A stretch of 64,000 nucleotides of DNA. Source: Laetmonice hystrix (lineage: Eukaryota). The translations under genes and the position numbers were made by a program. Shown piece after piece: positions 8,823-44,015 of the stretch; the first letter of the stretch is position 1, and the number at the start of each line of letters is the position of its first letter. The notes under the pieces are model-generated. The model had not been told where the DNA came from, made no database searches, and worked only from the letters and a program-made list of their open reading frames with translations. The DNA is taken from positions 50,902,001-50,966,000 of the forward strand of contig OZ249437.1 in assembly GCA_965235115.1 (NCBI GenBank), written 5' to 3'.

Positions 8823-10129
8823 TTTGGACTCTGTACTGATCATGTGACAATCCCAAAGTACCTCCTACCCAGAAGAGTGCATCCGGGCATGGTTGCCAAG
8901 TTTTCCAAACTTTACGTCCGAAGATCCTGATGGTCATGGATAAATGAAGACTTATTGGTTGTCGGAACATGTCATCATGCCGTTTCCTTTAATGACACTT
9001 TATTATGGCCAACTCTCTTTTTTCACAGGTACACAATGAGAACATAACGCTGATTTCATAGCGGAGACACATTTGGAACGATGTAAACAACAGTCAACAA
9101 CCCTCACCTCAGCCAGGCTCAGCAGCAGGTGCTTTCACAGTTTCAGTTTCAGTTTCACTGGCACTGACACTAATCTCAGTAGCATATCAGCCTAAATCTA
9201 ATCCATGTCTGTGTTGTTGCACAATAGCGACACGCCTAATACATCAATGATATACGGTGCCTGAGGTGCTCATTATTGTGTTACACTTTACAGTACTCTC
9301 ACGGTTTATTATGTATTTTATTACAATTAATTAATTTATTTATTTATTTATTAATTTATTAATTAATTTATTTACAATTAATGAATTATTATACGATTAG
9401 AGCACGATATGCGTAACTAGGGATAGATAATCATGATGCCTCATATTGTATTTGTCTCTCCTAATATGAAATGTCGGGGACATAGGGAGCGTGCAGCGTG
9501 TCTGGTAACTAAAATATTGCTAGTGCCATGGTAGGTGGATGTTAAACTCTACGGCGAGATACTGCGGCCTAACGATCACAGGTAGACTAGTAGGCTATGA
9601 TGAATATTTATTCATCGGACAGAAATGATTGAGAGCTAACCCTAACCCTAACCTTAACTAATCCTAACTCTATCTATAACCCAATCGAGCCCGACGATCA
9701 TACTCGGAAACAAAGCGGCGCTGTGTCGTACTGGATGTTGACACCAGAAGTCCCAGTCGGCGGAAGTGGGCTTTCAGCGCTGGCGGCGCATAGCGGGATT
9801 TGAGGGAACTAGTTTTGAGAATCGCACAAGCCAAAGTAGTTTACAGACAGCGATCGGCTGGTGAAAGTATAGATCCCATATTTCTCCTTCAGTCATTGGA
9901 GCCATAATTTAATTAGGCTATAGCTGGAATATTTTTGCATTCTTTACGAGTTTCTCATTAATTGACATTTTTTCGACCAATCACAATCGAGAAAATCCCG
10001 CAACTCGGACATTCAAGATGGCGTCGTGCATGGACTGCGGTCCGGTTACCATCCGGTTTAAGTTGTTGGCTTGGTGGATCGGGCAGAGGTTGAGAAGATC
10101 TACGTACGTTGCCATAACAGCGCTTCGCG

Positions 10130-10162
10130 GCGCCGCCTTCGGCGGCGCGCGCTGCGCGCTAA
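10130..10162 (+). mobile_element. Possible Helitron-type 3' end
   Basis: Perfect hairpin GCGCCGCC-TTC-GGCGGCGC (10130-10148), then 10 nt, then CTAA|T (CTRR followed by T). The 5' end was not identified. Confidence 0.35.
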
Positions 10163-10164
10163 TA

Positions 10165-11020
10165 TCGGGTGGATAAAAAAAAACGCCCCGAACTTTAAAC
10201 TTTAATATTTCAAAAACTATGCATTATAATTCAATAAAATTTCTCTCAACATCACTTCATGATATTATCTCTGGTGTGTTAAAGTTTCAGCTAAATAGCT
10301 TTAATATTAATCCCGTGGCGCTAAAAACAAAAATCAGTGTCTAAAATCGCAATGCCGGAATTAGGTCAAATATCATGCCGCTGCCAGGTGTCCAATTGGA
10401 CACCTGTTTGATGCACCGCATTGTATCTTGGGTTTAAAAAAATCAAAATTTAGTTTTTGCATGTTTTACAATATGTATAATGTTGTGGACCACTATAGAT
10501 TTAATAAAATATGTGCTATTCCTAATACTTTTAGAGAAAAAGAGATGTTTAATGTGCAAAACCCTACACAGAAACTGCACTCTTAAGACGGTATGACTGT
10601 AAGGAGAAGTTCAAGGGAAATCGTATCATTATCACGTTTAGCAACACATTCAGAACGTTTCGTATTTCCCAATGTTGGCAAGATATTTCCCTATCAGAGA
10701 TCAGGAAGTGCATTGGCTCATGGAAAAAGAGACTGAGAGCAGTATGGAGTGAAAACGGGGGACCGATTGACCACCTACTCTAGTGTGAGGCCAGGGACTC
10801 TGGGTGCGACTACCACTCGCTTTAGGCCGGCATTGCGCTTTTGTACAATGATTTTTGTTTTAAGCCCCACGGAAATATTATACAAGCTATTAAGTTGTAA
10901 CATTAACAACTAAGAGACAACATCATGAAGTGATATTAAGAAAAATTTCATTGAATTACAATAATTACTTTTTGAGATATTGAAGTCTAAAGTTTGGGGC
11001 GTTTTTTTTTATCCACCCGA
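10165..11020. mobile_element. TA-flanked ~855-bp MITE (Tc1/mariner-like), copy 1
   Basis: TIR TCGGGTGGATAAAAAAAAACGCCCC at both ends, TA at 10163-10164 and 11021-11022. A reverse-complement copy is at 28584-29437. Confidence 0.85.
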
Positions 11021-11557
11021 TATAATGTACTTCTACAGAATTTTTACTGGAGACCAAAGATTTATTTAAAGGTATAGATTTAGTGGCAGTATGACATGAA
11101 AGAGAGTTGGAAGTAACTGTAAAAAAGGCATTAAATTCCACATGGGCCTAATTGAAATAATATGATGTAGGTGCTACCTAGCGGACGAGCACAGCACCAG
11201 GAGTTAGGCCTAAATTATACACTGTCACTTAGCAACGTGACGAAAGTTTTATGTGCTCAAGACAGTATGTGTGGATTTGCCTTGGCCACCCTTGTCTACA
11301 TATGACATGTGTTGTCATAGAGCTCGCTTCACGAGACGCTTTGTGGCTCGCTGCACATGCTATAAATATTGAAGATGAAACCTCTTTTTAGATCTATAGA
11401 TAATGGAAGTATGGGCCAGGGGTGAGGATTCACTACATGATGTCTTACATTAGTTTGTAATATGTTTTTAATCACAGAATGGTTTGTAAATATTTGTATT
11501 GGTTTCAGTACTTTAACTTGAGGCCTACAGCAGTGTAAGCGTAGGACTTTCAGAAAG

Positions 11558-13686
11558 ATGAACGTTGATGTTGTTGGATATGTTCGGCCCCCAGTCCGGG
11601 GGGAGGAGTCCCCAGTCCTTGAAATGGATGGGCCCCACAGGCTATCAGCCGCACCAGGAGGTGTTACTGTGACGTAAGTTATAAGTTATTATCATTTATT
11701 TATAAACCTTCGTTTAAATCCAACTCACTTGTTAGATCCTCAATGCAGAATAATGGGTCCTGTGAATGGTTATAGCTTCAGTTGTGTCTCCAAGGCTTAC
11801 AAACTGACAGCAAGAAACGTTGACTGTTACTGGATCATGCAGACAGGAGAGGATCCATAACAAATCTACTTCTTGAATTGTCTTTCAGTCTACAACAGAT
11901 GCACCATGCTGGGACATCATCATATGATGTCTTTCAGCAGTCTGTGGTTCCACTTCTCGATGTGTTTGTGGCAGGATTTAATGTTAGTCTGATTGTGACC
12001 GGAGAGAGTGGCTCAGGGAAGTCATTTTCTGTAGCAGGAGAAGGTGTCACCAAGACTGGTATCATCCCCCTATTTATGGACAACCTATTTACAAAGATGA
12101 GGCAAGGTTTGTAAAGCCTTTTTTTAAACAGAAACTATTTTCTCTTTGCCATTGCCAATGCAGAGATGTTGGTCAAGGGGGGAGGGCAGTCCTTGAATAA
12201 GTATATGTTATCACACCGACTCAATCTTAGTATAGATCTACATGTATGATATTCTGAGCCCTTTTTTTCAGAATTGATATTTTTAACTAGAAATTAGGCC
12301 CTTCTCCACCTTGCTTTGTATTTAGGGCATAATGATATGGGAGAAAGAATTATTATCCAGTACCCTGGTATTTATTTTATAAACAAATATCACATAGGGC
12401 CTAAGACATTTCAGGATAATTCTAAAGCATGGATCTATTACAAACCAGATGAGCGTTTATTATATGATGCATCAAGGAGAGCCGAGCAACAAGTGACATT
12501 ACAGGTATATGAAATCTACAATGAGTTGGTACGAGACCTGATGCAGACTCCTAGTCTCACCACCAACTATGTGGAGATTAGCACCTCACCTACAGCAGGC
12601 CCATATCTTAAGGTACAAATCTAGACACCCAAATATTTAATGTTTGGTAGCTTTCATATTGTTAGAGCTACAGCCCGTAGCCCTAATCTATTCTGTTTCT
12701 GATCAATGTTTTAAAGTGAAGTACATGTATATTTGTAATGTTTTCCAGATTCCCTGAGAATTACATAAATAAAGTATAAATTTTGTATTCAAAAATATTT
12801 GCAAATTGTTGACACTTGAACTCGTGTAATTGAGTCATGTTTTATTAACATAGCTTTTTCCTTTGTAGAATGGTTGTGTTGCCCCAGTCAGAAGTGCAAG
12901 TGAGGGGGAAACTTTGTTTCATCAGGCATGGGCACGACGTTCTGACCACTACACAGACTTTGGTCCTGCCCAAAACCACTCCTCAATTCTCATCTATGTA
13001 GATTTGATACTGGTGAGTTTAGAAAAGTAACACTTTCATGTTTCATTGAATGGAATAACTCAAGATCAATCAATCCGTGCCTTGTTCCTCTGTAACTTAT
13101 AGCAGACCAGTGACAGCCCACTGCCAAACAAATCACGCTTCACTCTGGTGCTGACACCTGGTGGTGAAAAACTTGGAGAGGATTCACGTCAGTTGCGTGT
13201 CCGTGAGGGTCCAACGCTCAGTAAAAGTTTGGTGGCCCTCACTCAGCTTGTGGCCGCTTTGGTCAATCAGCCCTATGCTGACAGGGTAATCAATTACAGG
13301 TGAGTTTCACTTTTCTATAGTTAGACTATTAATACAGTCATAGTGCAATGCAATAGATGATGAGATAATTGCATGTTTCAAAACGAACAAAGGTTTATTG
13401 ATCATGGCAAATTGATACCCTGTATATGAAACTATATAAGGGAAACTGATCATGTAACAAAAGGAAAACTTTCAGTAATGCTTCTATTTTTTTCTTTCAT
13501 TTTTTGTGAAGTGACTCGAAACTTACATCTCTTTTGGTTGATGAACTGGGAGGCAACTGTAAGACAAGAGTCCTCCTCTGTCTGAAACCAAGGACTGACA
13601 GTTTGCTTCTAGAACCCATCATTCGTTTCACCAGTCAGTGTACACAAATCAAGAACTTTCCCATTCTCAACGACCCATTTGCTCAG
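11558..13686 (+). other. Divergent kinesin motor domain (exons 1-6 of the fusion gene, about 337 aa)
   Basis: MNVDVVGYVRP start; VAGFNVSLIVTGESGSGKSFSVAG (P-loop); VYEIYNELVRDLM; LSKSLVALTQLVAAL; INYSDSKLTSLLVDELGGNCKTRVLLCLKP; IRFTSQCTQIKNFPILNDP (helix 6 / neck). Confidence 0.93.
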
Positions 13687-16600
13687 GTAAACAAAACGTT
13701 TACAAAAAGTTGGTAAAACTGAGTTTAAAATCATTTGAAGATTATAAAAGAAATAACAGAAACATAGCGGCTATAACTTCAGCGTGGTTTACAAAAAACA
13801 GGGTACAATTATATAATGTGACCGCTTCAACCTTTCAGCAACTTGTGACCCAGTACCGAGCTCGTGTCCAGAACCTTCAACAACAGCTAGGTTGGAACAC
13901 TGGCCTGCCAAACCCAAATCTTGCCTTTGACACTCAGGTCGAACTGAGACGGCTGCAGACTGAAAACGTAATATTGACGTCATATTTCACCCAGAAATAT
14001 ATGTGGGGTGAAACAGTAATATACTGATAATTACTAAATAAGTTATGAGTAGTAGTTAAAAAGGAGGAATGCCTTCCAATTCGGAAAGTTCTTGAGAAGT
14101 TCTTTTTGTGTGATTATTTTCAAAATGTACTTGACGTTATATCTCAGAATGTGCTAACATGATAATTTAGCTTTGGTGCCGCTAGGTGACGCTACGTGAC
14201 CAGAACGACCGCCTGCAGGAACGATTAGACCATCTTCATGATAAGTTTGGTTCATTAGCGTCTACAAAGACGGACATCTCGTCACAGCTTCTCATGACTG
14301 AGGAGGAAAAACTTAAAGTAATAACCATCAGTGAATTATGCTTCAGAAGAGATCAAATTTGTACACTGATGAAGTAACTTAGTAAGAAGGGAAAAAAATG
14401 TCTTAACTTATATGCATGACAGCAATTTTTACAAATAAATTTATGTCTCTCTCGACTCTACTTGGATGAGTAATTAGGGTATACGAGCCATAAAGCTGGC
14501 CAAAAAACAGCACAAACGACACAAGAAATAACTTTTTAATTTCAGATATCAAAAACACTAGTTGAGATGCAAATGGAGAACAACAAGCTTAAAGAAGAAT
14601 GTGAAGCCACAAGATTTGAGCTCACGAATAAAGTACGTCCAGTGTTCGCCAGAGTGCTTGTCTGGAGTTGAGACATGATGTGCAAAAATTTCTTCCATTT
14701 TAACATTAAAAAATTATTGTGGCAAAATGAGATGGTAATGCGATGATATTATGACTACAAGTAGGCGGTTCAATATGCAAGGTCTATCTGTATGAAAAGT
14801 GGTTTCATGCCAATTTGTTCTTTAACCTCTCCATTTGTCTACGTTTAAAATGTTCAATAGTTGTTATCTGTTTATCAATGGGATCTAAGTTGTTCCCCAG
14901 GTATCCTCCTCTGAAACAAACGCTTTTGGTGAAAAGAGCATTTTTGGGGTGCTGTACAATTCTTTATCTAGTTTGTGTGTAGCCATAAGAAGGTATTAGA
15001 GTAAGACGAAATCTTTGAGGATGAAACATAAAACCATTGAATAGGAATGCTAGAATTGAATGGATATGTGGTTGTCGGGCATCTGAGTTTTTAAGGTCTT
15101 TCTGCAAAAGTATAGATCAAACATATTTTTCACAGGTCTTGCAGCTTGAGAGTGATTTATTACAAATGGACAATGATCGGGAAAAACATGCCAGAGAAGC
15201 TGCTAACGTGCAGGATCAGTTTTCAGCTTTACAACGCGATCGTAAAGAACTTGCAGACGAGTATGTGACCCTGAAAGCCAACTATGCTCGCCTCAACGAC
15301 GCTCATGATCGGGAGGTTAGACGTCGGCCGACTTTACGTAATTCTAGAATCATAGACGGCGAAATTGCACTACGTCCCCAATAATGTTATTTGGTGGGGG
15401 CCATATTGCCTCAAGTATATATTTTTCTATTGAATATCATTAATTAGGCCTCTTCCTAGTCAAGATCATGTTCCCCTACCACAGTATATTATATGATTCA
15501 CTGCACATGAGAATACACATGTACATGTATCTCTTTTAACACGTCTTGCCCATTGTGAAAATACTTTGACTGGACTCTGGAAAAAATATTTCACAAGGCA
15601 AAGTATTTGCTCTAACCAAAAACAATCAGACAAAGTCTCATCTTTGCTATTATTGGGAAACGGGAAGTGCTCTGTGCGAGTGTAATTCATTGTACGTTCA
15701 GAGGCAATTTTTGCAATTTCTTTCTTGTCCGTCAGGTTGCAAAGAATTCTGAGCTGAGTGTGGAGTTGTTGAATCTGGTGAATGGGAAGGCTGCACTTAT
15801 GAAGGAAATGGAACAACTGGAACTGTCGGGTAAAAAATACGGGGACTCAAATACTGAAGTGGAGAGAGTGCGGGCCATTGTCAGTCGAATGTCTCAACAC
15901 AGGGTAAAAACACATGAAGGATTTTTGTATTCTTCACCACTTTTTAATATACTTACAGTACATGGGGTGTCTGCAGACTAAGGAGTAATGTATCCGGGGG
16001 CTGTTTTATTTTGTAATCACATTATTGATGGTATTCTTAATGTTTGAATTTGGCCACAATATTTTGTTTTACATTTCGGTTTTTAGATGGATGATCTCAT
16101 GGCATCTGATGAAGACCGACAAAATGTTGCGAAACGTGTAAGTTTTGAAAAAAGTCAGTATATATTTTGTTATCAATGCAAGTAGTAGTTTACCGAATGT
16201 ATATGAGAATAACATTGTAATCTATAAGAAAAGCTACAGTTGTTGCTTCTTTACAGTTGTTTGGGTCAACAGCACAGCTGGAGCAAGAATTGCTGGCATT
16301 GCGTACCCAGCATGGTGACCAGATGCAAAAAATGGAGAGAAGACTGCAAGTACCTCTCAGTACAAATGTATACGTTGGGTATTTTGGTATCCCCAGCAGA
16401 TGCTTTTGGTTCCTCGTGAATTGTTTTATCTTTATTTGCACCAGTATCTTCCTTTTTTCAGAAATTGCAGTCTAAAGGTTATGCCTGCTTTTACCTGATG
16501 AACTCTAACGATAAATGGTATAAGTTTGTGTGCGATTGTCATTAACCTTATCAGGGCAGACTTAAGAAACGAAGTACACGATGCTCGAAACGTGGCACGG

Positions 16601-19600
16601 GAACGGCAACAAAAGGTCTCCGAAATGAATGCCGTGAGTTGAATGAAATTGGTCTGCCTATTTACCAATACTTGATCTGACCTAGCCCAGGTTTCTTAGT
16701 GGAGCTTGAGTCGAAATTTACTGCTCAAACTCACGAAGCCTGCGTAGGCGTCTTATGCCCGATTTCCACCGAACGCGAGCGAGCGATTTGTTTTGGTGCG
16801 CGCGCTTGCGTCAAAAGTAGAAATGTAGTTGAAGAGATTTCCACCAGACGCGCGTTTACAATCCATGAGATGTTTGCTGCAATATATTACAGCGTCTGAT
16901 CACCCAGCACGCAGAGGTTGAACAACTGAAGAGTCAGAACAATCGCATGCAACACAAACTGAAAGACGCCACTGATAACTTCCGCTCCCGTCTTGTCAAA
17001 TACGTGGAAGATATTGCTGTTAGTATTACTAGTAAATCGTCCTTCATACTTCTCTTGAATTACCAGTTTGAACAGAGCCCGTAAAAATGGAGTCAATTCT
17101 TGTTAACCTTATACATGTATATACTTGTTAATATGAAAGAGTTGATATTCATACACAACTGTCGGGAAATGCATTTTCCCTAATGTTATTAATTTTGTTG
17201 CTTATATTCATGAATTGAGGCATGCCTCTACATTGAGCAAAAATTAAATGGGCCTAGCTTAAGTCTATTGTTAAAGGGGCCCCGTCAATTAAAAGGTACG
17301 TTTCATATTTGGGGGGAATTGACGGAGTCCCTTTAACCCCAAGTGGAGGGGCAAGGCCCAATATCCACCCCCGCCCCCCACGCCCACCACAGTGCGACAC
17401 TCGGGCGGCAGTGCCTGTATCTCATACAGCATTGCGTAAGCGTCGGTGGTTTTTGGAAATTTACGTTTTAGAATATGAAAATGAACGTTTGCTTAATGAG
17501 GTCTGACAGTGCGTTATGTTTGTATGCTTGGCCCGCAAGGTAACAGTATATTGTGGAGACACTCTTGGCCTTTCAATGAAATCACCTAATAAAGTGTGTA
17601 ATTATTCCTACGGAAGCAATACATGGATGGGCGGAGTGACGCAGGGCCGTCTGCTGGCCAGGAACAAATGCGCGACTATGTGCGTGGCATGCATGGAGAT
17701 CTACGTAAGGCCCATAATGTACGGGAAATGCAGTTAAGCCAGGCAGCACAACACTACAAAAACCATTTGAAGGATGTGGTGTCCACACATGAGCAGTTAT
17801 TGATTGCTTACAGGTGAGGGCTGACTAAATCTTGCTGTATAAATTGCACGTGGAGAACGCACCCAGACAGGCCTGAAATTAATAGGTTCATCTTGGCCCT
17901 GAATAAGGTAGTGGCATCGAGTCAGCATTTCTTAAAGGGTGACTCCGAGTGCTCGGAATTAGTTAGTGTCAGGGTGCTATTCAAATATTATGCCCACAGG
18001 ATTGAATTGGGGGCGGATCTAGAAGGATCTGAAAGGATCTAGTGGATTCAAGGGGGTCTAGGGGTGGGCATTTAGGGTCAGTGTGTTGAGGGGGCGGGTC
18101 TCGTGCCCCCTAGGCCTCATAGTATCAGTAGAATTTAGAAAGCAAGAAATTGGCTGGCCTTGCTTGGCGGATTATTAAGACATTTATTAATTATCGGGTC
18201 TGATAGTTCCATCTAAGATTTGTAGTCCCTTACTTTCAAGTCAACATCATCATCAGTCCCCTTTTTTACCCAGCTGTAATATCACGCTTGACCTGCTAAG
18301 AGGTCTTTACGGGGATAAGAAATACATTCAGGTTTAAACATGGATTGGTAACACCTGAGAGATCCGTGTAGATAGCTGTCAAGATGATGACTTGACAAGG
18401 GTGTATGTTTTATTTGCTGTATGGCAGAAATCTCCGGCTAAAGGTTCAGAGTGGCACAGGTGGCGGCACTGAACTGGGACCTGCCTGTGATGAGTTCCGA
18501 TTATCGGAGCCAGAATTTACCAGTGCCCATCAGAAGGAGATAGATAGATTGAGGGAGGAACTGGATCACGCTTCAAGCCAGCTGGAACGGCTGCAGTTAG
18601 GAGTAAGTGTCAGGGCTCTTGGACGTTCTTTCTTTTTTCTGAATGGAAAATGTTTTTTTTTTCTCTCTCATAATGTGTATTGTTGGTGTTGATTCAGAGC
18701 TATGAACTGGTTGTTATGGATGGTTACTTTAAAATATAGGAGCGGCAGTCAGAACTGGGTATTGGTGTACATACTTTCATTTTAGGTTTGAATCCATTTC
18801 AAAAGAAGTTTTTTTTACAACGTTCATGATTAGATAAATCTAATTATTGTTAGTGCACTGTATAGAAACGGAGAAGACTTAACTTGTATTTGCTTTTTCT
18901 TTTTTTGTAGATAATTTTAACAGGTCAGGCGACCCTTTAACCATACAACTATTATAAAAATTGAATAAGAAGTGATCCCTTGGAAGCTTAGATCTTTTAC
19001 TGGAAGAAAACAAAAGGAATATGTTGATTGAGTGTTTCTTTTTTCTTTCGGTCCCTGACAGACCAAGGCAGTAATTGGAAAAGGCGCTAGTGTTGAATGA
19101 GCGAATTTTCAATTTGCATTTTTAATCTTTCACTCTGTTACCATTTTCCCCAATTTATTTGTTTCAGATAAGAATTGATGAGAAAGCAGATACTAAAGAC
19201 AAAAGGTCTGTATTACAACGCATTGATGTTGAAGATATTTATTTCAGCTGGACGATTTTCTTTATTTTATTTTTAGTCCCATAGATTGGAAGCTACGTAA
19301 TACACACATGACTCGTATATCACTTGAACCACTAAATCAAAGCAGAATGTCAATAAAAACATCCCTTCCACTGTTGTAGCAGTCCATGTTTGGGCCTCTG
19401 GGCTGAAGTCAATAGAAAGATTGTGAGAAAAAAGTAACAATTCCTATTTGTCTTTAAATCAGTGCTACCAATCTCCTGCCTGCTTAGTTAGCAAACAGCA
19501 TGGCTTGCACAGATCGTACCATGGTGAAGACCTACTTGAATTGTAAGCAATATTTTCCACCGCACTCTTCCCACTGTTATCAGTTTGTGGCAGATGACAT

Positions 19601-22600
19601 AGGATCGATAGCTTATCTGTGTCGTCGAGGACTTGATTAGCACTGGCAGAGTGTCAATACTATTATACATTGACCGTATACAATTTACAAAGTCTTGCTG
19701 CTGGTGCTGCTGGTGTTGGCGCTGCTGGTGTTGCTTCTGCTGCTGCTGCGGCTGCTGCTGCTGCTGGTGCTGCGGCCTCTTCAGCTTCACAACATTGTAT
19801 CCACGAACAATACCACTTTCCTTTTAGGCCAGACACAACGTGCCGGGTGGCTCGATTTCAACTTATGTGAAGAATCTTCTTATAATTTTTAAGGTCAACC
19901 TGGTTGGAAACTAGATCACATGAATAAATGAGAAAACAGCAAAGAAATGAGCAAATTTATGCGGGAAAACGGGAAGCACCATCGGGGACTCTACATACTT
20001 GTATATACGGTATAGCGTTGTCCCAAAATCTGATGTTAAAAGGATGGTTCCTGGATGTTATTATCATGGTACAACCAGCATCAGTCAATGACTATAGATC
20101 TGGATTAAAAACATATACTGACGGCAATAAAAACGCATAGGACGACCGTTTCATTATGAAATCTGAATTACACATGAACATTTTGACAGCAATCTCAGGC
20201 CTAACGTCGCAGATTTCGCTTGGAGTTAGAGACGGTAGAATTATATCTATTAAAGGACGGATCATTTAGATACACAATTTTTTTTATTTTTTACACGTTT
20301 TTACGAAACAAGCTGACTCCATGTTTAAATGCTCCATGTTGCATGGAAGCCACGAATCAAAGCCTGTCTAATAAGACGCCAAATAATTCACAACAACGCG
20401 AGGTACACTACAGGGTATAATATACATGTATATAGTGAGGTGTCATTTCCATATTATATTGTACCGCCTTTGATAGCTTACTTTTTCAATGTCAATTCAA
20501 AGAATCCCTAAGTTAGCTGAAAAGCGTTTAATTTGTTGCCAGTCGACGGATGGACAGAGGCCCTGATCGGGACGGGTCGTGGACAGAACTCCGTCGTCAG
20601 ATGCGCCAGTGGTCGGAAGGCACACAGCAGCAGTTGGAGACCGAGCGAGCCCAGCTACTTACTGCCAACACCATGCTGGAAGAGGAGAACGGCCAACTGA
20701 AGAGTTACATTGACACACACCTCAAAAGGTGAGTGCGAATGATACTGGCAGGCGTTGGAATGAGCCAACCAGGTGCTGTGCAGGCTCATATTATTGTAGA
20801 TGGAATGGGACATTTTAAGGGGAATGAGTAAAAATAATTTTCAAACATGATATTGAAAAAAGAAAAGAAATACACACTGTGCAAAGCCGTCTGTACCATT
20901 CATTCAATAATGTCTAATGAATGCACCGTTAAGCACACTCAAAAGAGAGCGAGAAGACAATTATTTGGAAATAACACATTTATTTCCCTCCCGGAATGAT
21001 GAAATACCTAGGAATCTAAAAAGGGCGTAACAAGATGATTGCTGAGATAATGAGGAAAATTATTGATAGCTGTTTTTGGTCAGGTTGATGAACAGATGAG
21101 ATGAAGATACCGATAATGACATTATCAAAAGAAAATGAATGGTGAGTTTAATTGACTTGGCCGTGTGAGTGTGGGAAAACGGGGTAATTCGTTGAATTAC
21201 CAGGTAGAATGGAAACGTGTGAAAGGCAGGGGGAGTGGAGTCGAGAATGGAAACACCACTAGTGTTTACCCTAGCCATGATAATATTCTAATTATGGGCA
21301 GAATTTCGAATTTTGCCCTTTAGAAACAAGTGAATGAGGTTTGTTAAGCTTTTCATTCTTGTACCGAGAACAGAACTGGAGGCTAATATGTATTACACCT
21401 CAATGGTTCAGTGATCATCATAATTCATGTGACAGTGCAGCTGCTGTTTCCTGATTGGTCCCCACGCCTGCATGGACAATCCCACATGTCGGGTTTTATC
21501 CCTTGGACCTTAATCCCCCACTTACCTGTCCTATTCCCTAGCAGAATGAGACAATGTCATCATGTCTATTGGTTTTAACTCTCTCCCCCCCCCCCCGAGA
21601 TTTCCTGGAAATAGATCCTCTTCTGGTCGTTGCCTTATCATGAATAAACATGGCATGATTTAATTGTGGTACTGAAGCTGATGCTGCGTATCAAAACACT
21701 GAAAACTTTTTTGGCCGAAGCCAGGTGACTGTTGAACCACGCTTGGTAGGTGCTGGATGTGAACGGTGATTGAAGGCGTCTGGTATGTGAATCAACGCGG
21801 CGAATACTATTATATTAGATATACAGAACTTCATATAGACATATATCATATACTGTAACAATACTAGTGGCAAAATACACTCTCGGCTGATAGAACTGAG
21901 ACCTATTATGGTGGTCGTATATACCGGGCTAAGTCAATATTAATACTCGCATTTTGTTGGGCAGTATTTGTTTTGGTTGTTTGAAGGCCTGTTGAAATAA
22001 ATTTCTAGAATTAAGACATTTTTTTAATGACAACGTTTTCACTTTAATGTAGAATCCAGAATGCTAAAAAATTCAAAAAGGTCACGTGAAGATTTATTTC
22101 ACAGTTTAATAATGTTTTGTTTGATAATTTTTATTAACAAAACGTAATTTTTCGTCGAGTAATCAGGCGATAGAAATTTTTGTTCTTGTGTTAAGTCGCA
22201 CAAATATCCTGTGAAAATAGTTGTGATTTCAAGACTGATTCTAATGAAAACAGCAAGAACTCGTAATGTGACCTTGAAGCGGAATGCTAAATGGGATGTT
22301 TTCTTCACCTTTTTATTACTGTGGGTATTTGTGATGGTGGTAATTAGATGGCAGACAGAGATAGCTCCAGAATTATACGGAGGCTGAGCTGGAGATTCCA
22401 TCCATCACAAGGGCAGATAATCTCCTGGCTGTTGGCCGACAAATGATTCGTGAGATAGTGACATGCCCCATTGTCTGCCGTGAAGGCCGGATGACGTCTC
22501 TGTATTGTCCTTGAATACAATAAACCAGTATCCTTGTGTCCCAGGTGGCATTCATATTTATCTTGATATAAGCCATGTTTTCTCACTGCAAACCTTAACT

Positions 22601-25600: not shown

Positions 25601-28600
25601 CAATGGTTACCAGGCTGCGGAGTCTATCTGCCAAAGTCAGTGATTATAATTAGTACGGAGCTAGAGAAAACATTATCAGGGAGGTTCTCACGATAAATGC
25701 AATCTCTCTCCGCGGACCTCTGCTTCTTATTCCCGGGGGTAACTTGCAAGATTTTTCTGTCAATCACTGTCTGTGTTTTCCAACTGTGGCCAAGGGAGCA
25801 ATAGACTGGTACCTGGCTTCACTTGTAGGACTGTAATATTACATGTATCTTTAAATGTGAAGACCCTGGGCGCAATAGACCCGGGTTCTCACTTGTGTAG
25901 ACTTTCTGTAAAGTTTTAATGTTGGACTTTACCAAGAGAGCAAGCTCTGTTGGTGACGTTACTCAGAGAGAGGATATTAGAGGTTAGTTTTTCCAACCAC
26001 TGCTGGGGTCGATTGGCTGAATTTTCCGTGAGCTCTGGGTCTCTGAAGTTCCATTCACAATCGCCTTAAGTCACAACCAATGATGGCTATACATTGATCT
26101 GTATCAAAAGAAATACTCTAACATTATTAGATTTCACTTATGAGAAGGCTTTACAACCTTTGAATGTGTTTGATTTAGAGATTGACGTGATAGTCACATC
26201 TCGACAGCAGACGGCATACGTCACTCCCACGGCTATTTAACGAGGACATGTTAAAGACTGACGTTTTCCTGAATTCAACTGGAGCGCCTATAAAGGTTCA
26301 TGGAATTAATCTCATAAATGTCATTGATGCCAAACTAACGTTGAAATATAGATATATAAATTAGTTGCAAGTATTTAAACTTCAATGGCGGATATCTGTT
26401 CATCCCCGTTTATTCCGCCAGCCTGAGCCATTGCCGGCTGAGATTTTTCTGAGCGGTTTCGGCTCGTTTCCACTAAACGTTGGTACCCGTCACAGGATGG
26501 CAGGTGGCTATATCTTGGAGCTCGTGTGGCCGGGTGTGCGTGTCGGGCTAGACGTAACTATAGTTTCATGGCGGATACATCAACCAACACTGAGCAACGA
26601 CTGGCAGCCAGCCTGGGCGTCCTGATGGAAAGGTTACCAAACAACACGTAGGGGTCAGCCTCAAGCTTTTTAAATGGGTACACATGAGTATGTGTGAGGT
26701 TAGTCTGATGACTTTATTAAGTCTTAAACGGGAGTGGAAGGTCACTATGTACTGATTAGGTGCCGCAATCACTGACGTTTTATACACGCCTGGCGATTGT
26801 GAACTTGACTCATTATGACGTTCATGATACTCAGATACTTGTGAAGATGGTACGGCCCCAGGCTGAGGGTAATAGTTTAATTCTCCTCCATTGGCATTCA
26901 ATATCAATCAGATCTGTTAAGATTTGGCTGGGGTAACGATAAGTCATTAACTTGAACATGACAGTTCTTGGTACCGTTCCGCAGCATATACGTCAATGGA
27001 GATGCCACTTAACAAACGCCAGGCTGAGCCTGACAGGTTTTACCCCATGTGCCATGCTGATCTATGTGTGCATTATCCTGGTACTCGAGGCTAATCGAGG
27101 AGAGCGCTTTGATTGGCCCATCGAAAACATGGACGCAAACGTCAATGGTAGTTCCGTATCCTCCGCATTTCTCCGACAAGATACAGATTTTTTTCAATCC
27201 TTTTACAATACAAGTGTTAAATATCCTTGCTTTTCTGGAGGTAGACATATAGTCTCATCGGTCCCTAAGAGAGGCTACGGTCTGTACCTCACTCAGGGCC
27301 ATGTTGGCCACTCTCCAAGCAGAGATCGGTCACTCCGTTGACGCTGACCAACGCAACGGAAGCGGGAGTGCTTGGAGTTTAATCACTTCCTTCCGCTTGT
27401 CGGTTTTCTGACAGTAAAATTACCCATCACCTGGCCTAACATAGCGGACGCGTCTGTTTGGCAGGGGACCAGGCTATGTGTGAATATGTCATGTGTCTTC
27501 CCGGCTGTGCCAAACAGATATGTGCAGATATCACTTAACAAACGCCAGACTGAGGCTGACAGGTCTTTCCACTGTGTCCGACAGATTTAAACACCAGGGT
27601 GTCTACAGATAAGTGAATATGTAACTGAAAAACCAGACTGAGGGCGGCAGGTCTTCCCCTGTGTCCTACAGAGAAGTGAATATGTAACTGAAACACCAGA
27701 TTGAGGGCAGCAGGTCTTCCCCTGTGTCCTACAGAGAAGTGAATATGTAACTGAAACACCAGACTGACGGCGGCAGGTCTTCCCGCCGTATCCTACAGAT
27801 AAGAGAATATGTAACTGAAACACCAGACTGAGGGCGGCAGGTCTTCCCGCTGTGTCCTACGGATAAGTGAATATGTAACTGAAACACCAGACTGACGGCG
27901 GCAGGTCTTCCCGCCGTATCCTACAGATAAGAGAATATGTAACTGAAACACCAGACTGACGGCGGCAGGTCTTCCCGCTGTGTCCTACAGATAAGTGAAT
28001 ATGTAACTGAAACACTAGACTGAGGGCGGCAGGTCTTCCCGCTGTGTCCTACAGATAAGTAGATAATCACTTCACACCAGACTGAGGGTGACAAGTCTTC
28101 ATCGCTGTAGCATGCAGATATATGAAGATGTTACTTAGCATGACTGTGCCAGACTGCTGAGGGTGACATGTATTCATCGCTGTACCACACTGATATATAT
28201 AAAAGATGTCACTTAACATGCTCCAGACTGCGAGTGAAAGGTCTTTACTCCTGTTACCTACAGTTAGATCATCGTGGCTTTACCAGTCTGTTGATTTTCA
28301 ACTAGCCACATTCTCTGAGGGTAATCACATTGTTAGAGGCAGGCAGACATTAAGAAGACTGTCGTAATGTCCCATACAGTTGTCTATGAGACACAAAAGT
28401 ACTGGGATCACGTGATAATACCCATTACTAGCTTTGCACCCTCCACATTTCCCCAGTAACTTTGACTTACAAGTCGAGTCGGCACTTTTCTCTGCCCGCC
28501 TGCCAGGGGCAGGTATCTAAGGTTCAAGCTTCTCTTCCCTTCAAATTGTTCGGTGTCAGGTTGTTTGGCTTTTATAGCTTATATCGGGTGGATAAAAAAA

Positions 28601-31600
28601 AACGCCCCGAACTTTAAACTTCAATATTTCAAAAAGTAATAATTGTAATTCAATGAAATTTTTCTTAATATCAGTTCATGATGTTGTCTCTTAGTTGTTA
28701 ATGTTACAAGTCAATAGCTTGGATAATATTTCCGTGGCGCTTAAAACAAAAATCATTTTACAAAAGCGCAATGCCGGCCTAAAGCGAGTGGTAGTCGCAC
28801 CCAGAGTCCCTGGCCTCACACTAGAGTAGGTGGTCAATCGGTCCCCTGTTTTCACTCCATACTGCTCTCAGTCTCTATTTCCATGATCCAATGCACTTCC
28901 TGATCTCTGATAGGGAAATATCTTCCCAACATTGGGAAATACGCAACGTTCTGAATGTGTTGCTAAACGTGATAATGATACGATTTCCCTTGAACTTCTC
29001 GTTACAGTCATGTCGTCCTAATGTTGCAGTTTCTCTGTAGGGTTTGGCACATTAAACATCTGTTTTTCTCTAAAAGTACTAGGAATAGCACATATTTTAT
29101 TATATCTAGTGGTCCACAGCATGATACATATTGTAAAACATGCAAAAACTAAATATTGATTTTTTTTTGCCCAAGGTACAATGCAGTGAATCAAACAGGT
29201 GTCAAATTGGACACCTGGCAGCTGCATGATATTTGACCTAATTCCGGCATTGCGTTTTTAGACACTGATTTTTGTTTTTAGCGCCCCGGGATTAATATCA
29301 AAGCTATTAAGCTGAAACTTTAACATACCAGAGATAATATGATGAAGTGATATTAAGGGAAATTTTATTGAATTATAATGCATAGTTTTTGAAATATTAA
29401 AGTTTAAAGTTCGGGGCGTTTTTTTTTATCCACCCGATATATGCCCTAAATCCTAATATCTTGCCATCGTGCTTAATAATAAACAAAATTGATGTAATAA
29501 TTTTAATAATTTACCGTATATGGCAATATGGTTGCCCAGAATCCAGTTACGCCCTTGATTTATAAGATAAGTGAGACAAACCAAACCCTGCGTTCTTCTC
29601 TTCCCACTTGAAAAGATAAGGTGGTAGCCTCAAATGTGGGTTTAACAGCTGGGAGATGATAAATTCCCTGTCAAGGAAGGGTTGCAGAAAAAGGATTCAG
29701 CGTCATAGGGTAGCACAATAGATCACCAGCCTGGTGTCTGTTTGGCGGGCCTTTAGATCGGTAGCTGCCAATTAGGGACCGAATAACAACTTCAGGACGT
29801 GCCCGCCATTTATCAGACTATGGAAGGAATGATACACAGTGCATGCCCCAGTCTCTGAGAGCGTGGGCGTACCGTATGTCCACCACAGTAGGTCCTATAT
29901 AGTCGGCAAGTTTTTTTAACGTACCGTTGAATTTAATATCATATGAAATTCTAGACGTCAATGTATCACGTTTAGCCGCATTTCTAGTCTACATTATGTG
30001 ACCGTGGGACTGTAGTCGAGTGACTTAACATGATATTTAATGGCTAAACTTGATTATTGTCAGACAGGACTTCAGCAGGAAAATAGAGTTATAAAGTGCC
30101 GTCTTTTGCATGAGAGTGCATATAATGCCATAGATTGTAAGCATCAATTATTCAGCGTTATCGCCCCTGGCACCAGCTGCCTTGGCAGCGTAGGACCGGC
30201 TAAGATGTAGTGAGGCAAGTTAAAGAGGACATTGACGAAGGTCCTGACCGCCGGCCCACAGTCACCGGTCGCAATCCCTTCACTAACATCAGTGAAGGCG
30301 CTCCTCAATGAAAAACATAATCACTACAAATACCCGTTTTTTCAGTGAAAGGAGCCCAGTAGAAAAGTTTGAGGGAAATGTCTGTATACGGAGAAGATGG
30401 TACAGAGGAAATTGGTCTGAGAGGATTTGCGTGTGGAGTGTAAGCAGGATGGGAGATGGGAATAAATGAAGAGTAAGGGAGGGGAGGTCTGTCATTAACA
30501 GGCTCAAGTCGGCTCCTTAATCTTGTCTTCCACAAATTGAGTCTGTGATTTAGATTAGTAGCACCATTTAAATTTAAATTGTAGGAGTGGCCACCCGAGG
30601 TATGTTTTGGGATAATTGACATTTACCCCAGTGAGATGGATTATTGGAAGTTTGTGCGTTGTTGTAGTCTTCCATAATACGAATATTCTCCATCACTTGA
30701 AATTACAACGGAGTATCATTATATTTAGAGTTACTGATTTGGTTTGACCTGTTTATTATAGATAAGACATCTCATCAAATGGCAAGTAAGGAAATATATT
30801 TTGGGTGATAACTAAAGATGTTGCTGTCAGTGTAAAGCTATAGACATGGAGAGTTGGAGGAAGTGTTGGATGACGACGCCCTACTGATTAGTGCGAATCT
30901 ATAGATCATGGTTCGTGCGCCTTCCCTACTTCAGAATCCCTCGACAGATCAGGTTGAACTCAGCTGGAATGGCGATGATCCGCACGATCCATTGGTTCCT
31001 ATCTGGCAGTACGCCAGATAGTTGGTCGCTGTTTTTCATACTTTTTTTTCTCTCTTTAAAATGAGATATTAAGTATTTAGATAAACAGTCCTCGGTAAGA
31101 ATCGCTTGACAATTGGATAACGGATTAAGGATCAGTACGTTAAGAAATCAGTTACAGGTTATTGCGCAAATTCCCGATTGTTTGTATAATTTCATAGCAT
31201 CGGCAGAGGCATTGAATTTTAATAATGTACAAACTGTTGACTCTGCTTGTCATAACCTTAATTCAAGGAGTATGCAATGGAAAGAAGAAAACTGAGAAAC
31301 AGGAAGTCGTGGTTTTATATGGGAAACCTGGCCGCTGCGCCAGATGTTTATACTTGTTTTAATTTCAGATGACAGCGGTAGTGAAGTTATGATTTCTTTA
31401 TCTCACTGTTTCCACTATTGATAACTGAGCTCCGGCATATATCATGAATGAGCTTACCTTCGAAATTTACGCCGATGTACATAACATGTTTATATTTAAA
31501 AGAAATGGTATGCTGACCAGGAATGCAATTGCAAAAACATTTATATAATAGACCCGGAATTAAACGTGTAGGTGGACTAGCAAAATGTATCGGATCCGGT

Positions 31601-43600: not shown

Positions 43601-44015
43601 GCATTCAGTCACCCCAAGAAAATTTATGATGTGTTTTGTCATAAGGTGTCTTTTATGGTTGCAAATAGACTTTTTATTATTCTGGTGTGATTATGTCATG
43701 AAATCTACAGGATCCTTTAAGAAAAGGTCCACTTCAGTATTTATGTTTCCTATGTAAATTGTTGTAAGCTATGTCAAATGGCTTATGCAGGGAAATCTGA
43801 TATAGGCATGAGGCGGTGTGGGGTGTTGGAGAAAGGCTGGGTGTGGTTAGAAACAGGTCGTTTGCCTGAACACGTATCTGAAGATGTTCTCTGTCCGTTT
43901 CAGCTATAAGGATGAGATAACTCGACTCCGTGAGATGTTGGGAGTGCGGGATACAGGCGGGGGGTTCATCAGTCCAGGGCCACGCCTCAACTGGACCAAG
44001 GACAGGGCAAAGTGA
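11558..44015 (+). CDS. CCDC78: Kinesin-motor-domain / CCDC78 coiled-coil fusion protein, 20 coding exons, about 919 aa
   Basis: Exons 11558-11673, 11889-12106, 12449-12612, 12869-13012, 13106-13299, 13512-13686, 13839-13967, 14186-14317, 14546-14632, 15136-15315, 15736-15903, 16087-16137, 16257-16345, 16555-16633, 16893-17018, 17617-17813, 18428-18602, 19168-19205, 20543-20728, 43904-44015. Sum 2760 nt, one open frame, all phases compatible (one GC donor needed at 16346). CCDC78-like motifs: ISKTLVEMQMENNKL, EYVTLKANY, NSELSVELLNLV, FRSRLVKYVEDIA, REMQLSQAA, HEQLLIAYR, SWTELRRQMRQW, YIDTHLKSYKDEITRLREML. Confidence 0.85.
19695..19790 (+). repeat. Imperfect (GCT)n trinucleotide tract in an intron of the fusion gene
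   Basis: gctgctggtgctgctggtgttggcgctgctggtgttgcttctgctgctgctgcggctgctgctgctgctggtgctgcg. Confidence 0.85.
23260..23522. mobile_element. ~260-bp interspersed element with terminal inverted repeats and an internal telomere-like (TAACCC-type) tract, copy 1
   Basis: Ends GGTGTGACAGGAATGTAGGTCC / GGACTTACATTCCGTTCACACC; internal ccctatccctaatcctaaccttaatcctaat. A similar direct copy is at 58955-59214. Confidence 0.75.
24271..24425. mobile_element. Small MITE-like inverted-repeat element
   Basis: TAAAGCCAGGAATCCATGTGTACGTA (24271-24296) matches the reverse complement of 24400-24425 with one mismatch. Confidence 0.65.
27530..28270. repeat. 63/64-bp minisatellite
   Basis: Unit acaccagactgagggcggcaggtcttcccgctgtgtcctacagataagtgaatatgtaactgaa. 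Period markers at 27628, 27691, 27754, 27818, 27882, 27946, 28010. Degenerate units on both flanks and an isolated decayed unit near 27010-27070. Confidence 0.92.
28584..29437. mobile_element. TA-flanked ~855-bp MITE, copy 2 (inverted relative to 10165-11020)
   Basis: Same TIR TCGGGTGGATAAAAAAAAACGCCCC with TA flanks. The interior is the reverse complement of copy 1 (e.g. ctgccaggtgtccaattggacacctgtttg at ~10381 vs caaacaggtgtcaaattggacacctggcag at ~29193). Confidence 0.85.
34175..35209. mobile_element. Tc1/mariner (pogo-like) non-autonomous element
   Basis: TA flanks (34173-34174, 35210-35211). TIR CAGTCAGACCCCGTTA / TAACGAGGTCTGACTG, with repeated (A)TCCGGA subterminal motifs. Confidence 0.82.
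36740..36886 (-). pseudogene. RecQ-like SF2 helicase fragment (motif 0 to motif I), probably transposon-derived (Academ-like)
   Basis: LNFGISRVKPYQVRLLQTVLSGRDTFVYQRTGQG-HQAF resembles RecQ FG...kpyQ...i..vLsGRDtfv..pTG.GKSlcyQ. The KS of Walker A appears deleted and no downstream helicase motifs were found. Confidence 0.6.
37198..37370. mobile_element. TTAA-flanked palindromic (foldback) MITE, Kolobok-like termini
   Basis: TTAA at 37194-37197 and 37371-37374. ~80-bp imperfect arms GCGACAGTCTCG...CAGTTCCT / AGCAACTT...CGAGACTGTCGC. A partial copy of the right arm is at ~7425-7508. Confidence 0.8.
42735..43113. mobile_element. TTAA-flanked foldback MITE (Kolobok-like), inside duplication copy 1
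   Basis: TTAA at 42731-42734 and 43114-43117. Long arms AGGCAGGGTAAACACCCACGGC... / ...GCCGTGGGTGTTTACCCTGCCT. The counterpart at 50071-50398 has a shorter loop. Confidence 0.85.

What the first reader, a model, noticed from the sequence alone, without database searches (positions are those of the whole stretch)
12869..13299. The motor looks like a pseudo-kinesin: P-loop intact, switch I and switch II rewritten
Seen: the P-loop GESGSGKS is intact. Switch I (consensus T.mN..SSRSH) reads TDFGPAQNHSS, lacking the Asn, both Ser and the Arg. Switch II (consensus LVDLAGSE) reads LVLTPGGE, lacking the Mg-coordinating Asp. The microtubule-binding L12/helix 5 segment (INYSDSKLTSLL) and helix 4 (LSKSLVAL) remain kinesin-like. 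Established: the switch I Arg / switch II Glu salt bridge is needed for ATP hydrolysis, and degenerate motors such as Costal2, Smy1 and Vik1 act as non-motile scaffolds or heterodimer partners. Inference: a nucleotide-binding but hydrolysis-dead microtubule anchor, or an inactive partner of another kinesin.
Basis: partly seen in the sequence, partly recalled or inferred. Interest (0 to 1): 0.75.

Follow-up and report, generated by a model that had tools for sequence, protein, structure and literature searches.

The report
CCDC78 ortholog with degenerate kinesin head
The stretch is part of an expressed, correctly spliced gene for the invertebrate form of the cilium protein CCDC78, whose kinesin-like head keeps its nucleotide pocket and microtubule-binding face but has lost the residues a kinesin needs to burn ATP; relatives from protists to sharks share this loss in varying degree, so it is not a local defect.

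Summary
Exons 4 and 5 (12869-13012, 13103-13299) of a + strand gene encode the switch I and switch II regions of a kinesin motor domain. Switch I reads TDFGPAQNHSS in place of NxxSSRSH. Switch II reads LVLTPGGE in place of DLAGSE. The P-loop GESGSGKS (exon 2, 12001-12024) and the helix 4 / L12 / helix 5 microtubule face are intact. Spliced transcript contigs confirm 14 junctions, and no alternative exon supplies canonical motifs.

The gene is the single-copy ortholog of CCDC78: an N-terminal kinesin head, then DUF4472, then coiled coil, about 900 aa. It sits with annelids in a tree that mirrors the species tree. About 100 database orthologs carry the head, and none has SSRSH or DLAGSE. The TD[FY]GP-type switch I already exists in the protist Thecamonas. 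The switch II Asp varies by lineage (D, E, R/K), and a hydrophobic residue there is seen only in this protein and two of three annelids.

The P-loop is the best conserved segment of the head. In bivalves the head has dN/dS of about 0.04-0.06.

My best reading is a nucleotide-binding, non-hydrolysing, static microtubule anchor. By analogy with published CCDC78 work it would act at motile-cilium tips. The gene is a new member of a known family. I found no paper describing the family-wide dead-motor state. Biochemistry is untested.

The parts
11558..11673 (+). Exon 1 with the start codon (ATG 11558): beta-1 strand and the N4-type adenine motif, here YVRP (family consensus RIRP).
   Evidence: Sequence; junction 11673/11889 in a spliced contig; family alignment.
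11889..12106 (+). Exon 2: helix 1, beta-3, P-loop GESGSGKS (12001-12024), helix 2.
   Evidence: Pfam PF00225 E 1.8e-11; junctions confirmed; the P-loop is the most conserved segment of the family head.
12449..12612 (+). Exon 3: beta-4 with the YEIYNE motif and loop 8.
   Evidence: PF00225 E 2.9e-4; junctions 12106/12449 and 12612/12869.
12869..13012 (+). Exon 4: helix 3 and the switch I equivalent TDFGPAQNHSS (12953-12985). It lacks the Asn, both Ser and the Arg of NxxSSRSH.
   Evidence: Translation; alignment to canonical kinesins and orthologs; junctions.
13103..13299 (+). Exon 5: beta-7, the switch II equivalent LVLTPGGE (13145-13168; Asp replaced by Leu, Gly and Glu kept), loop 11, helix 4 (13217-13240) and the start of L12.
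   Evidence: PF00225; PDB alignments; acceptor at 13103 from a spliced contig.
13512..13686 (+). Exon 6: L12/helix 5 (DSKLTSLL..GGNCKT), beta-8, helix 6 and the start of the neck.
   Evidence: PF00225 E 1.6e-5; junctions; conservation 0.69.
13839..14317 (+). Exons 7 (13839-13967) and 8 (14186-14317): conserved neck (TQYRAR) and the first coiled coil.
   Evidence: Ortholog tblastn; junctions.
14546..15315 (+). Exons 9 (14546-14632) and 10 (15136-15315): the DUF4472 domain that marks CCDC78.
   Evidence: PF14739 at 35.3 and 35.4 bits, each above the 26.6 cut-off; junctions.
15736..17813 (+). Exons 11-16 (15736-15903, 16087-16137, 16257-16345, 16555-16633, 16893-17018, 17617-17813): coiled-coil tail. 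The intron 16346-16554 has GC..AG ends.
   Evidence: Spliced contig joints and the loose end after 17018 that matches 17617 onward.
18428..20728 (+). Two further predicted tail exons (about 18428-18600 and about 20545-20728). Their inner boundaries are not resolved.
   Evidence: Ortholog tblastn and frame-consistent splice search only; no transcript data read here.
43904..44015 (+). Predicted last exon (YKDEITRLREML.. then stop TGA 44013-44015). An identical second copy lies at 51189-51300.
   Evidence: tblastn to orthologs' C-termini; the two copies are identical. Which copy is used is not tested.

Best explanation
The gene is the ortholog of CCDC78 in its ancestral long form of about 900 aa: an N-terminal kinesin-fold head, a conserved neck, DUF4472, and a coiled-coil tail. 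The head is a conserved pseudo-motor. It keeps the phosphate-binding P-loop, the adenine motif, the switch II Gly and Glu, and the helix 4 / L12 / helix 5 microtubule face. It lacks the switch I Ser-Ser-Arg and the switch II Asp that kinesins need to coordinate Mg and close the catalytic site.

Most likely mechanism (inferred): the head binds nucleotide but does not turn it over, so it stays in a strong-binding, rigor-like state on the microtubule. The coiled coil would pair two heads, and DUF4472 and the tail would recruit partners. [quoted passage not shown]

Shown here: identity, architecture, expression, splicing, motif states, conservation and the fold of a close ortholog. Inferred: nucleotide binding, absence of hydrolysis, static binding and cellular location.
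For: Identity: PF00225 on exons 2, 3, 5 and 6. PF14739 (DUF4472) on exons 9 and 10, above cut-off. The best full-length relatives are named CCDC78 or CCDC78-like and share the kinesin + DUF4472 architecture. Exon 5 has one match in the 627-Mb genome. The maximum-likelihood tree places the window protein inside spiralians (100/100) next to annelids (94/91) and mirrors the species tree.

A real, expressed gene: 14 GT/GC..AG junctions appear in spliced contigs of run X4. The ORF is intact.

Degenerate catalysis: see the alignments. Of about 100 head-bearing orthologs none has SSRSH or DLAGSE. The Arg position reads H/N/Y/F/Q in most. The Asp position reads D 36, E 36, R 19, K 12, and V or I once each.

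Maintained function: the P-loop pattern GxxxxGK[ST] is present in 85 of 96 orthologs and is the most conserved segment (0.86 against a mean of 0.55). L12/helix 5 scores 0.69, the neck 0.67, and the switch II Glu is E in 104 of 106. dN/dS of the head is 0.037 and 0.061 in two bivalve transcript pairs.

Fold: an AlphaFold2 model of the annelid ortholog (53% identical) has pLDDT 88.7 and pTM 0.90, and matches kinesin motor structures at TM about 0.8, E 3e-30.

[quoted passage not shown] A Tetrahymena tip-cap protein is a predicted kinesin with a CCDC78 domain (PMC10522465).
Against: No biochemistry was done. Nucleotide binding, lack of hydrolysis and static binding are inferred from motifs. The family-conserved TD[FY]GP Asp and the invariant switch II Glu could support unconventional chemistry. 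About 15% of orthologs keep the switch I Arg and about two thirds keep an acidic residue at the Asp position, so some family members may be active and the family need not be uniform. The fold was predicted for an ortholog, not for this protein, because the spliced sequence cannot be handed to the tool by reference. The ciliary-tip role is transferred from head-less vertebrate proteins and a distant ciliate homolog, and no localisation data exist for this organism. No RFX X-box was found within 2.5 kb upstream. The 3' third of the gene model has no transcript support here.
Confidence: 0.6

Rival explanations
1. The head is still an ATPase or motor with unconventional catalytic residues. For example, the conserved Asp of TD[FY]GP could replace the switch II Asp in Mg coordination, giving slow or regulated hydrolysis.
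For: The P-loop, the N4 motif, and the switch II Gly and Glu are conserved as in a working pocket. TD.G is nearly invariant from Thecamonas to vertebrates. dN/dS is very low.
Against: In this protein the two switch I serines, the Arg salt-bridge partner and the switch II Asp are all missing at once. The Asp position tolerates D, E, R, K, V, I and L across the family, which does not fit a catalytic residue. Kinesins that lack these motifs, such as KIF26B, lack ATPase activity (PMC3387196).
Confidence: 0.15
2. The head is a nucleotide-free structural microtubule-binding module, and the P-loop is conserved only for folding.
For: Several tetrapod orthologs that keep the head have a broken P-loop (for example GEWDSRKS, GESDSRKW), and Thecamonas has GASGSGRS. 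So the head can persist without a canonical P-loop.
Against: The P-loop is the single most conserved segment of the head in 34 orthologs (0.86), more so than the microtubule face, and the adenine motif is also conserved. The broken P-loops occur in tetrapods, the group in which frog, turtle, bird, snake and mammal proteins have no head.
Confidence: 0.17
3. The head is the inactive partner of a heterodimer with a catalytic kinesin, as with Vik1 or Cik1 and Kar3.
For: Affinity purification of Xenopus Ccdc78 recovered the kinesin-2 accessory subunit Kifap3 (PMC12796433).
Against: That Xenopus protein has no head, and Kifap3 is not a motor chain. The top interactor was Ccdc33. Nothing in this window or in the orthologs points to a partner kinesin. 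I did not test this.
Confidence: 0.05
4. It is a decaying pseudogene or a mis-spliced reading, and the true transcript carries canonical motifs.
For: None found.
Against: Spliced transcript contigs match the model exactly. No SSRSH- or DLAGSE-encoding exon lies in the gene. The ORF is intact and orthologs share the state. Within-sample coding variants are 7 synonymous to 3 non-synonymous.
Confidence: 0.01

Closest known systems
CCDC78 (vertebrate Ccdc78 of frog, mouse and human; deuterosome and extreme distal tip of multiciliated-cell cilia; PMC12796433)
   Same: Orthologous by DUF4472 (PF14739), coiled-coil tail, database naming of the nearest relatives and tree position.
   Different: The studied vertebrate proteins are described as all coiled coil, without a kinesin domain. 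This protein has the N-terminal kinesin-like head, as do the cnidarian, mollusc, annelid, echinoderm, hemichordate, amphioxus, tunicate, shark, lungfish, caecilian, salamander and alligator proteins.
Tetrahymena ciliary-tip cap protein I7LVY1, a predicted kinesin with a CCDC78 domain (PMC10522465)
   Same: The same two-part architecture. The protein is reduced in cilia lacking the CEP104/FAP256 cap complex, and the authors propose that it binds central-pair microtubules.
   Different: Very distant. I could not retrieve its sequence, so its switch motifs were not examined. The non-animal orthologs I did see (Thecamonas and three unnamed) already have the TD.GP-type switch I.
KIF7 / Costal2 (kinesin-4)
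   Same: An immotile kinesin that binds microtubules statically and accumulates at the cilium tip (PMC8886809, PMC12919046). This is the closest functional analogy.
   Different: A different family and tail, a role in primary cilia and Hedgehog signalling. From memory, KIF7 keeps canonical switch motifs and is slowed by altered mechanochemistry, not by loss of catalytic residues.
KIF26A/KIF26B, Smy1 (kinesin-11)
   Same: Kinesin heads that bind microtubules but lack ATPase activity and lack DLAGSE (PMC3387196).
   Different: KIF26B also lacks the IFAYGQT P-loop-flanking motif, whereas here the P-loop is intact. There is no DUF4472, and the tails and biology differ. Relationship to kinesin-11 was not tested by phylogeny.
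Vik1/Cik1 (partners of Kar3)
   Same: A kinesin-fold domain without catalysis that binds microtubules (from memory).
   Different: Those lack a nucleotide pocket altogether, lie at the C-terminus, and act only as heterodimers with a catalytic kinesin. No such partner is indicated here.

Membership tests
Kinesin superfamily motor domain (PF00225) | Sequence match to the motor-domain profile, and kinesin fold | tested here: met
   Exon-wise PF00225 hits in profile order. Orthologs score 128-204 bits. The AlphaFold2 model of the 53%-identical annelid ortholog matches kinesin structures at TM about 0.8, E 3e-30.
Kinesin superfamily motor domain (PF00225) | N1 P-loop GxxxxGK[ST] | tested here: met
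   GESGSGKS at 12001-12024. Family form is GE[ST]xSGK[ST], with Glu where kinesins have Gln.
Kinesin superfamily motor domain (PF00225) | N2 switch I NxxSSRSH | tested here: not met
   TDFGPAQNHSS: Asn to Gly, Ser-Ser to Gln-Asn, Arg to His. No ortholog has SSRSH.
Kinesin superfamily motor domain (PF00225) | N3 switch II DxxGxE | tested here: not met
   LTPGGE: Asp to Leu, with Gly and Glu kept. No ortholog has DLAGSE. The Asp position reads D/E/R/K/V/I across the family.
Kinesin superfamily motor domain (PF00225) | N4 RxRP adenine motif | tested here: inconclusive
   YVRP here: the first Arg is replaced by Tyr, and Arg-Pro is kept. The family consensus RIRP is conserved.
Kinesin superfamily motor domain (PF00225) | Microtubule-binding helix 4 / L12 / helix 5 | tested here: met
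   REGPTLSKSLVAL and VINYSDSKLTSLL..GGNCKT align to canonical KEGxxINKSL and VPYRDSKLTRLL..GGNxKT.
Kinesin superfamily motor domain (PF00225) | Microtubule-stimulated ATPase and motility | not testable with these tools
   Needs purified protein.
CCDC78 | DUF4472 (PF14739) domain | tested here: met
   Exons 9 and 10 score 35.3 and 35.4 bits against a 26.6 cut-off and cover profile positions 8-96 of 107.
CCDC78 | Orthology: nearest relatives are CCDC78, single copy, gene tree follows species tree | tested here: met
CCDC78 | Localisation at the ciliary distal tip or deuterosome; interaction with CCDC33 | not testable with these tools
   Known only from PMC12796433 for frog, mouse and human.
Kinesin-11 (KIF26, Smy1) or the cilium-linked orphan families Kinesin-16/17 | Placement in that clade in a kinesin-wide phylogeny | not tested
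   No named reference set of kinesin families was available. The sequence-nearest solved heads are kinesin-3 (KIF14, KIF13B, KIF1A), kinesin-8 and KIF4, all at 22-28% identity and similar E-values. PMC2867816 lists Kinesin-16 and -17 as confined to ciliated organisms, with no published functional data for Kinesin-17. This is only a lead.

The most novel reading that the evidence does not exclude
The CCDC78 head may define an ancient kinesin lineage, older than animals. In it the ATPase was converted early into a nucleotide-holding, non-hydrolysing 'rigor' clamp, with its own conserved motifs: P-loop GE[ST]xSGK[ST], switch I TD[FY]GP, switch II LPGxEKL. The clamp would cap or anchor microtubule ends at the tip of motile cilia. 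It was then degraded stepwise and discarded several times within vertebrates, where the coiled-coil tail plus CCDC33 took over microtubule binding.
Probability: 0.35. Interest if true: 0.65.

Novelty: new member of a known kind. Interest (0 to 1): 0.45.

Why it matters
[quoted passage not shown] How it engages microtubules is not settled, and the studied vertebrate proteins have no recognisable microtubule-binding domain. This gene and its relatives show that the ancestral protein carried a kinesin head whose catalytic switches are degenerate but whose nucleotide pocket and microtubule face are under strong selection.

That gives a concrete, testable mechanism for tip anchoring: a rigor-like pseudo-motor. 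It also offers a natural series in which to ask when catalysis was lost. Cnidarian and sea-star proteins keep the switch I Arg together with an acidic residue at the switch II Asp position (Asp only in the sea stars). Annelid proteins lose both. Some tetrapod proteins have a broken P-loop. Ray-finned fish, turtle, bird and snake proteins have no head, and frog and mammal proteins are described as head-less in PMC12796433.

It also qualifies the published statement that vertebrate Ccdc78 lacks the kinesin domain. For this particular window the result is ordinary: a well-behaved ortholog of a known family.

Tried and rejected
1. Exon-sized queries to the ESM Atlas returned only generic 'kinesin motor domain' clusters scoring below 0.9. 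They were not informative.

2. I looked for the window's own protein in the 5.8-billion-protein collection so that I could fold it. It was not among the 120 listed of 183 hits. I therefore folded the closest ortholog (Paralvinella, 53% identical in the head) as a proxy.

3. I scanned both strands for an alternative exon encoding SSRSH or DLAGSE. There is none in the gene; the only loose matches lie far away or on the minus strand.

4. RFX X-box search in 9000-11900: no full site, only a half-site GTTGCCAT at 10108. This says nothing either way about ciliary regulation.

5. dN/dS for this lineage was not possible, because no relative closer than about 53% identity exists in the collections. I used two bivalve transcript pairs instead. 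dS there is saturated (about 1.4), so the ratios 0.037 and 0.061 are rough but clearly far below 1.

6. Literature: 'DUF4472' gave no paper. 'pseudokinesin' gave one unrelated paper. 'CCDC78' plus 'kinesin' gave 26 papers, and in the two I read the kinesin domain is mentioned only for Tetrahymena.

7. I could not test whether the family equals Kinesin-16 or Kinesin-17 of Wickstead et al. (PMC2867816).

8. I could not retrieve the Tetrahymena I7LVY1 sequence. Thecamonas and three unnamed non-animal orthologs served instead.

9. The pseudogene reading is rejected.

Full report
**What is at the coordinates.** The interval 12869-13299 is two coding exons of a + strand, multi-exon animal gene, separated by a 90-nt intron. 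I built the gene model from reading frames, splice signals and ortholog alignments. I then checked it against public runs. One run of the same sample as the genome reads (X4) holds spliced contigs whose joints coincide exactly with my exon boundaries: 11673/11889, 12106/12449, 12612/12869, 13012/13103, 13299/13512, 13686/13839, 13967/14186, 14317/14546, 14632/15136, 15315/15736, 15903/16087, 16137/16257, 16345/16555 (GC..AG) and 16633/16893. A loose end after 17018 continues at 17617.

**The observation.** The encoded head starts at ATG 11558. The motif positions are as follows.
- P-loop GESGSGKS: aa 77-84, nt 12001-12024 (exon 2, outside the coordinates given).
- Switch I region TDFGPAQNHSS: aa 195-205, nt 12953-12985.
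- Switch II region LVLTPGGE: aa 229-236, nt 13145-13168.
- Helix 4 LSKSLVAL: nt 13217-13240.
- INYSDSKLTSLL: spans the exon 5/6 junction.

Pfam's kinesin model matches exons 2, 3, 5 and 6 in the correct profile order, with E 1.8e-11 for exon 2 alone. Exon 5 aligns to solved kinesin-3 heads with LVLTPGGE opposite LVDLAGSE. A scan of the window found no alternative exon encoding SSRSH or DLAGSE in the gene.

**What the gene is.** A search of 1.84 billion representative proteins with exon 2 returned a set of roughly 900-aa proteins matched near their N-terminus. Their sources name them coiled-coil domain-containing protein 78 (CCDC78) or CCDC78-like. All carry PF00225 followed by DUF4472 (PF14739). 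The window's exons 9 and 10 each hit DUF4472 above the curated cut-off. Exon 5 occurs once in the 627-Mb genome. A profile search found 183 relatives.

Proteins with the kinesin head come from cnidarians, an acoel, a flatworm, molluscs, a brachiopod, annelids, echinoderms, hemichordates, amphioxus, tunicates, sharks and rays, coelacanth, lungfish, caecilians, salamanders and alligator. Head-less proteins of about 570 aa come from ray-finned fishes, turtles, birds and snakes.

In a maximum-likelihood tree the window protein lies inside a fully supported spiralian clade, next to Capitella and Paralvinella (94/91) and then Owenia. The whole tree follows the species tree. This is a vertically inherited single-copy ortholog, probably from an annelid or a close ally. 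The reconstructed protein is about 900 aa, like its relatives.

**Is the degenerate active site local or a family trait?** It is a family trait, with lineage-specific variation. Counts below are database sequences, not independent lineages, and cover about 100 head-bearing orthologs.
- No ortholog has SSRSH or an S[ST]R[ST]H pattern, and none has DLAGSE.
- Switch I begins TD[FY]GP (or close variants) from the apusozoan protist Thecamonas to vertebrates.
- The position of the catalytic Arg reads H 28, N 16, R 15, Y 14, F 13, Q 10, K 3, S 2. The Arg survives in cnidarians, sea stars, Thecamonas and one unnamed non-animal protein.
- The switch II Asp position reads D 36, E 36, R 19, K 12, V 1, I 1. 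Asp occurs mainly in vertebrates, sea stars, hemichordates and Lingula. Glu occurs in molluscs and most cnidarians. Arg or Lys occurs in tunicates, amphioxus, some corals, Owenia and Mobula. A hydrophobic residue followed by Thr-Pro-Gly occurs only in Capitella (V), Paralvinella (I) and this protein (L).
- The switch II Gly reads G in 97 of 106, and the Glu reads E in 104 of 106.
- The P-loop pattern GxxxxGK[ST] holds in 85 of 96. The exceptions cluster in tetrapods that still have the head (for example GEWDSRKS, GESDSRKW), with a few more in rays, Capitella and Thecamonas.

**Is the head maintained by selection?** Yes.
- Across 34 orthologs the P-loop is the most conserved segment (mean top-residue frequency 0.86 against 0.55 for the whole head). 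Next come beta-1 with the adenine motif (0.71), switch II (0.71), L12/helix 5 (0.69) and the neck (0.67).
- Two pairs of bivalve transcripts (88-89% protein identity) give dN/dS of 0.037 and 0.061 for the head, similar to the rest of the protein (0.02-0.07). dS is saturated, so the ratios are rough.
- Within the sequenced sample the coding variants I could read are 7 synonymous and 3 non-synonymous.
- The head of the annelid ortholog (53% identical to this one) folds with high confidence (pLDDT 88.7, pTM 0.90). It matches kinesin motor structures at TM about 0.8. The top matches are kinesin-3 heads (KIF13B, KIF1A, KIF14), followed closely by many other families at 22-28% identity, so no assignment to a named active family follows.

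**How it most likely works.** Established kinesin enzymology gives the following roles. The P-loop holds the phosphates. The switch I serines and the switch II Asp coordinate Mg and the gamma-phosphate. The switch I Arg and switch II Glu form the salt bridge that closes the site for hydrolysis. The ATP-bound and empty states bind microtubules tightly, and the ADP state binds weakly.

A head with a selected P-loop and adenine motif, but without the serines, the Arg and the Asp, is best read as one that holds nucleotide without turning it over. It would therefore stay tightly bound. The conserved microtubule face and neck fit this reading. This is inference, and I put it at about 0.6.

The cellular context comes from the literature. 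Vertebrate Ccdc78 marks deuterosomes and the extreme distal tip of multiciliated-cell cilia. It works with Ccdc33, bundles microtubules, and controls tip organisation, length and beating (PMC12796433). In Tetrahymena a predicted kinesin with a CCDC78 domain is depleted from cilia lacking the CEP104/FAP256 cap complex, and its authors propose that it binds central-pair microtubules in the cap (PMC10522465). A rigor-like head would be a natural tip anchor.

The rivals are a slow unconventional ATPase (0.15), a nucleotide-free structural module (0.17), an inactive heterodimer partner (0.05) and a pseudogene or mis-splicing (0.01, refuted).

**Comparison with what is known.** The closest family is CCDC78 itself, and membership is met on every feature I could test. 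As a kinesin it meets fold, P-loop and microtubule-face criteria and fails the switch I and switch II criteria. It is a kinesin-fold pseudo-enzyme, not a canonical motor.

Functionally it resembles KIF7, an immotile kinesin that binds statically and accumulates at the cilium tip (PMC8886809, PMC12919046). It also resembles KIF26A/B, which bind microtubules, lack ATPase and lack DLAGSE (PMC3387196). It differs from both in family, tail and the retained P-loop. Whether the head belongs to one of the cilium-restricted orphan kinesin families of Wickstead et al. (PMC2867816) is untested.

**Novelty and verdict.** For this window the finding is a correct reading of an ordinary ortholog: a new member of a known family. 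Databases already annotate the kinesin domain of non-mammalian CCDC78. In the two papers I read it is mentioned only for Tetrahymena, and PMC12796433 states that vertebrate Ccdc78 lacks it, which the shark, lungfish, amphibian and alligator proteins qualify. I found no paper describing the conserved loss of the catalytic switches. That family-level point, and the graded series of degeneration ending in repeated loss of the head, is moderately interesting and directly testable. Interest is 0.45.

I confirmed that the two copies, 43904-44015 and 51189-51300, are identical.

Noticed in passing
window 13160: The contigs of three DNA runs of the same sample read T where the assembly and the transcript contig read G. 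This changes codon 234 from Gly to Cys, at the switch II glycine, which is G in 97 of 106 orthologs (C in two). It is probably a heterozygous allele, and it is not independently confirmed.
   Followed up: partly
window 12028-12030 and 12607: There are two further non-synonymous variants in the sample. Ser86Thr lies just after the P-loop and gives the family-typical GKSFTV. The other is Leu165Val. Seven other coding variants are synonymous.
   Followed up: partly
window 43904-44015 and 51189-51300: The predicted last coding exon lies about 23 kb downstream of the previous exon (which ends at 20728) and exists as two identical copies. Which copy is spliced in was not tested.
   Followed up: partly
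related proteins, not in the window: The kinesin head of CCDC78 is present in sharks, rays, coelacanth, lungfish, caecilians, salamanders and alligator. It is absent from the listed ray-finned fish, turtle, bird and snake proteins. This implies several independent losses and qualifies the published statement that vertebrate Ccdc78 lacks a kinesin domain. Tetrapods that keep the head have a broken P-loop (Gly to Arg or Lys before the Lys). Gene-model truncation was not ruled out for each species.
   Followed up: partly
window 12001-12024 and the family alignment: The family P-loop GE[ST]G[SA]GK[ST] has Glu where kinesins have Gln. From memory, it reads like the myosin P-loop GESGAGKT. This is a curiosity and was not analysed.
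   Followed up: no
window 16346-16554: This intron has GC..AG ends, supported by a spliced contig.
   Followed up: yes
window 16624-16822 and 17221-17400: These intronic stretches have summed contig depth in the thousands in the DNA runs, against about 60 nearby. They are high-copy repeats, presumably transposable elements.
   Followed up: no
window about 10160-10215, 10985-11020 and 28590-28640: A short element ending in a run of A next to CGCCCCGAACTTTAAAC recurs in both orientations upstream of the gene and again downstream. It looks like the ends of a small mobile element. A short telomere-like CCCTAA run lies near 9640-9665.
   Followed up: no
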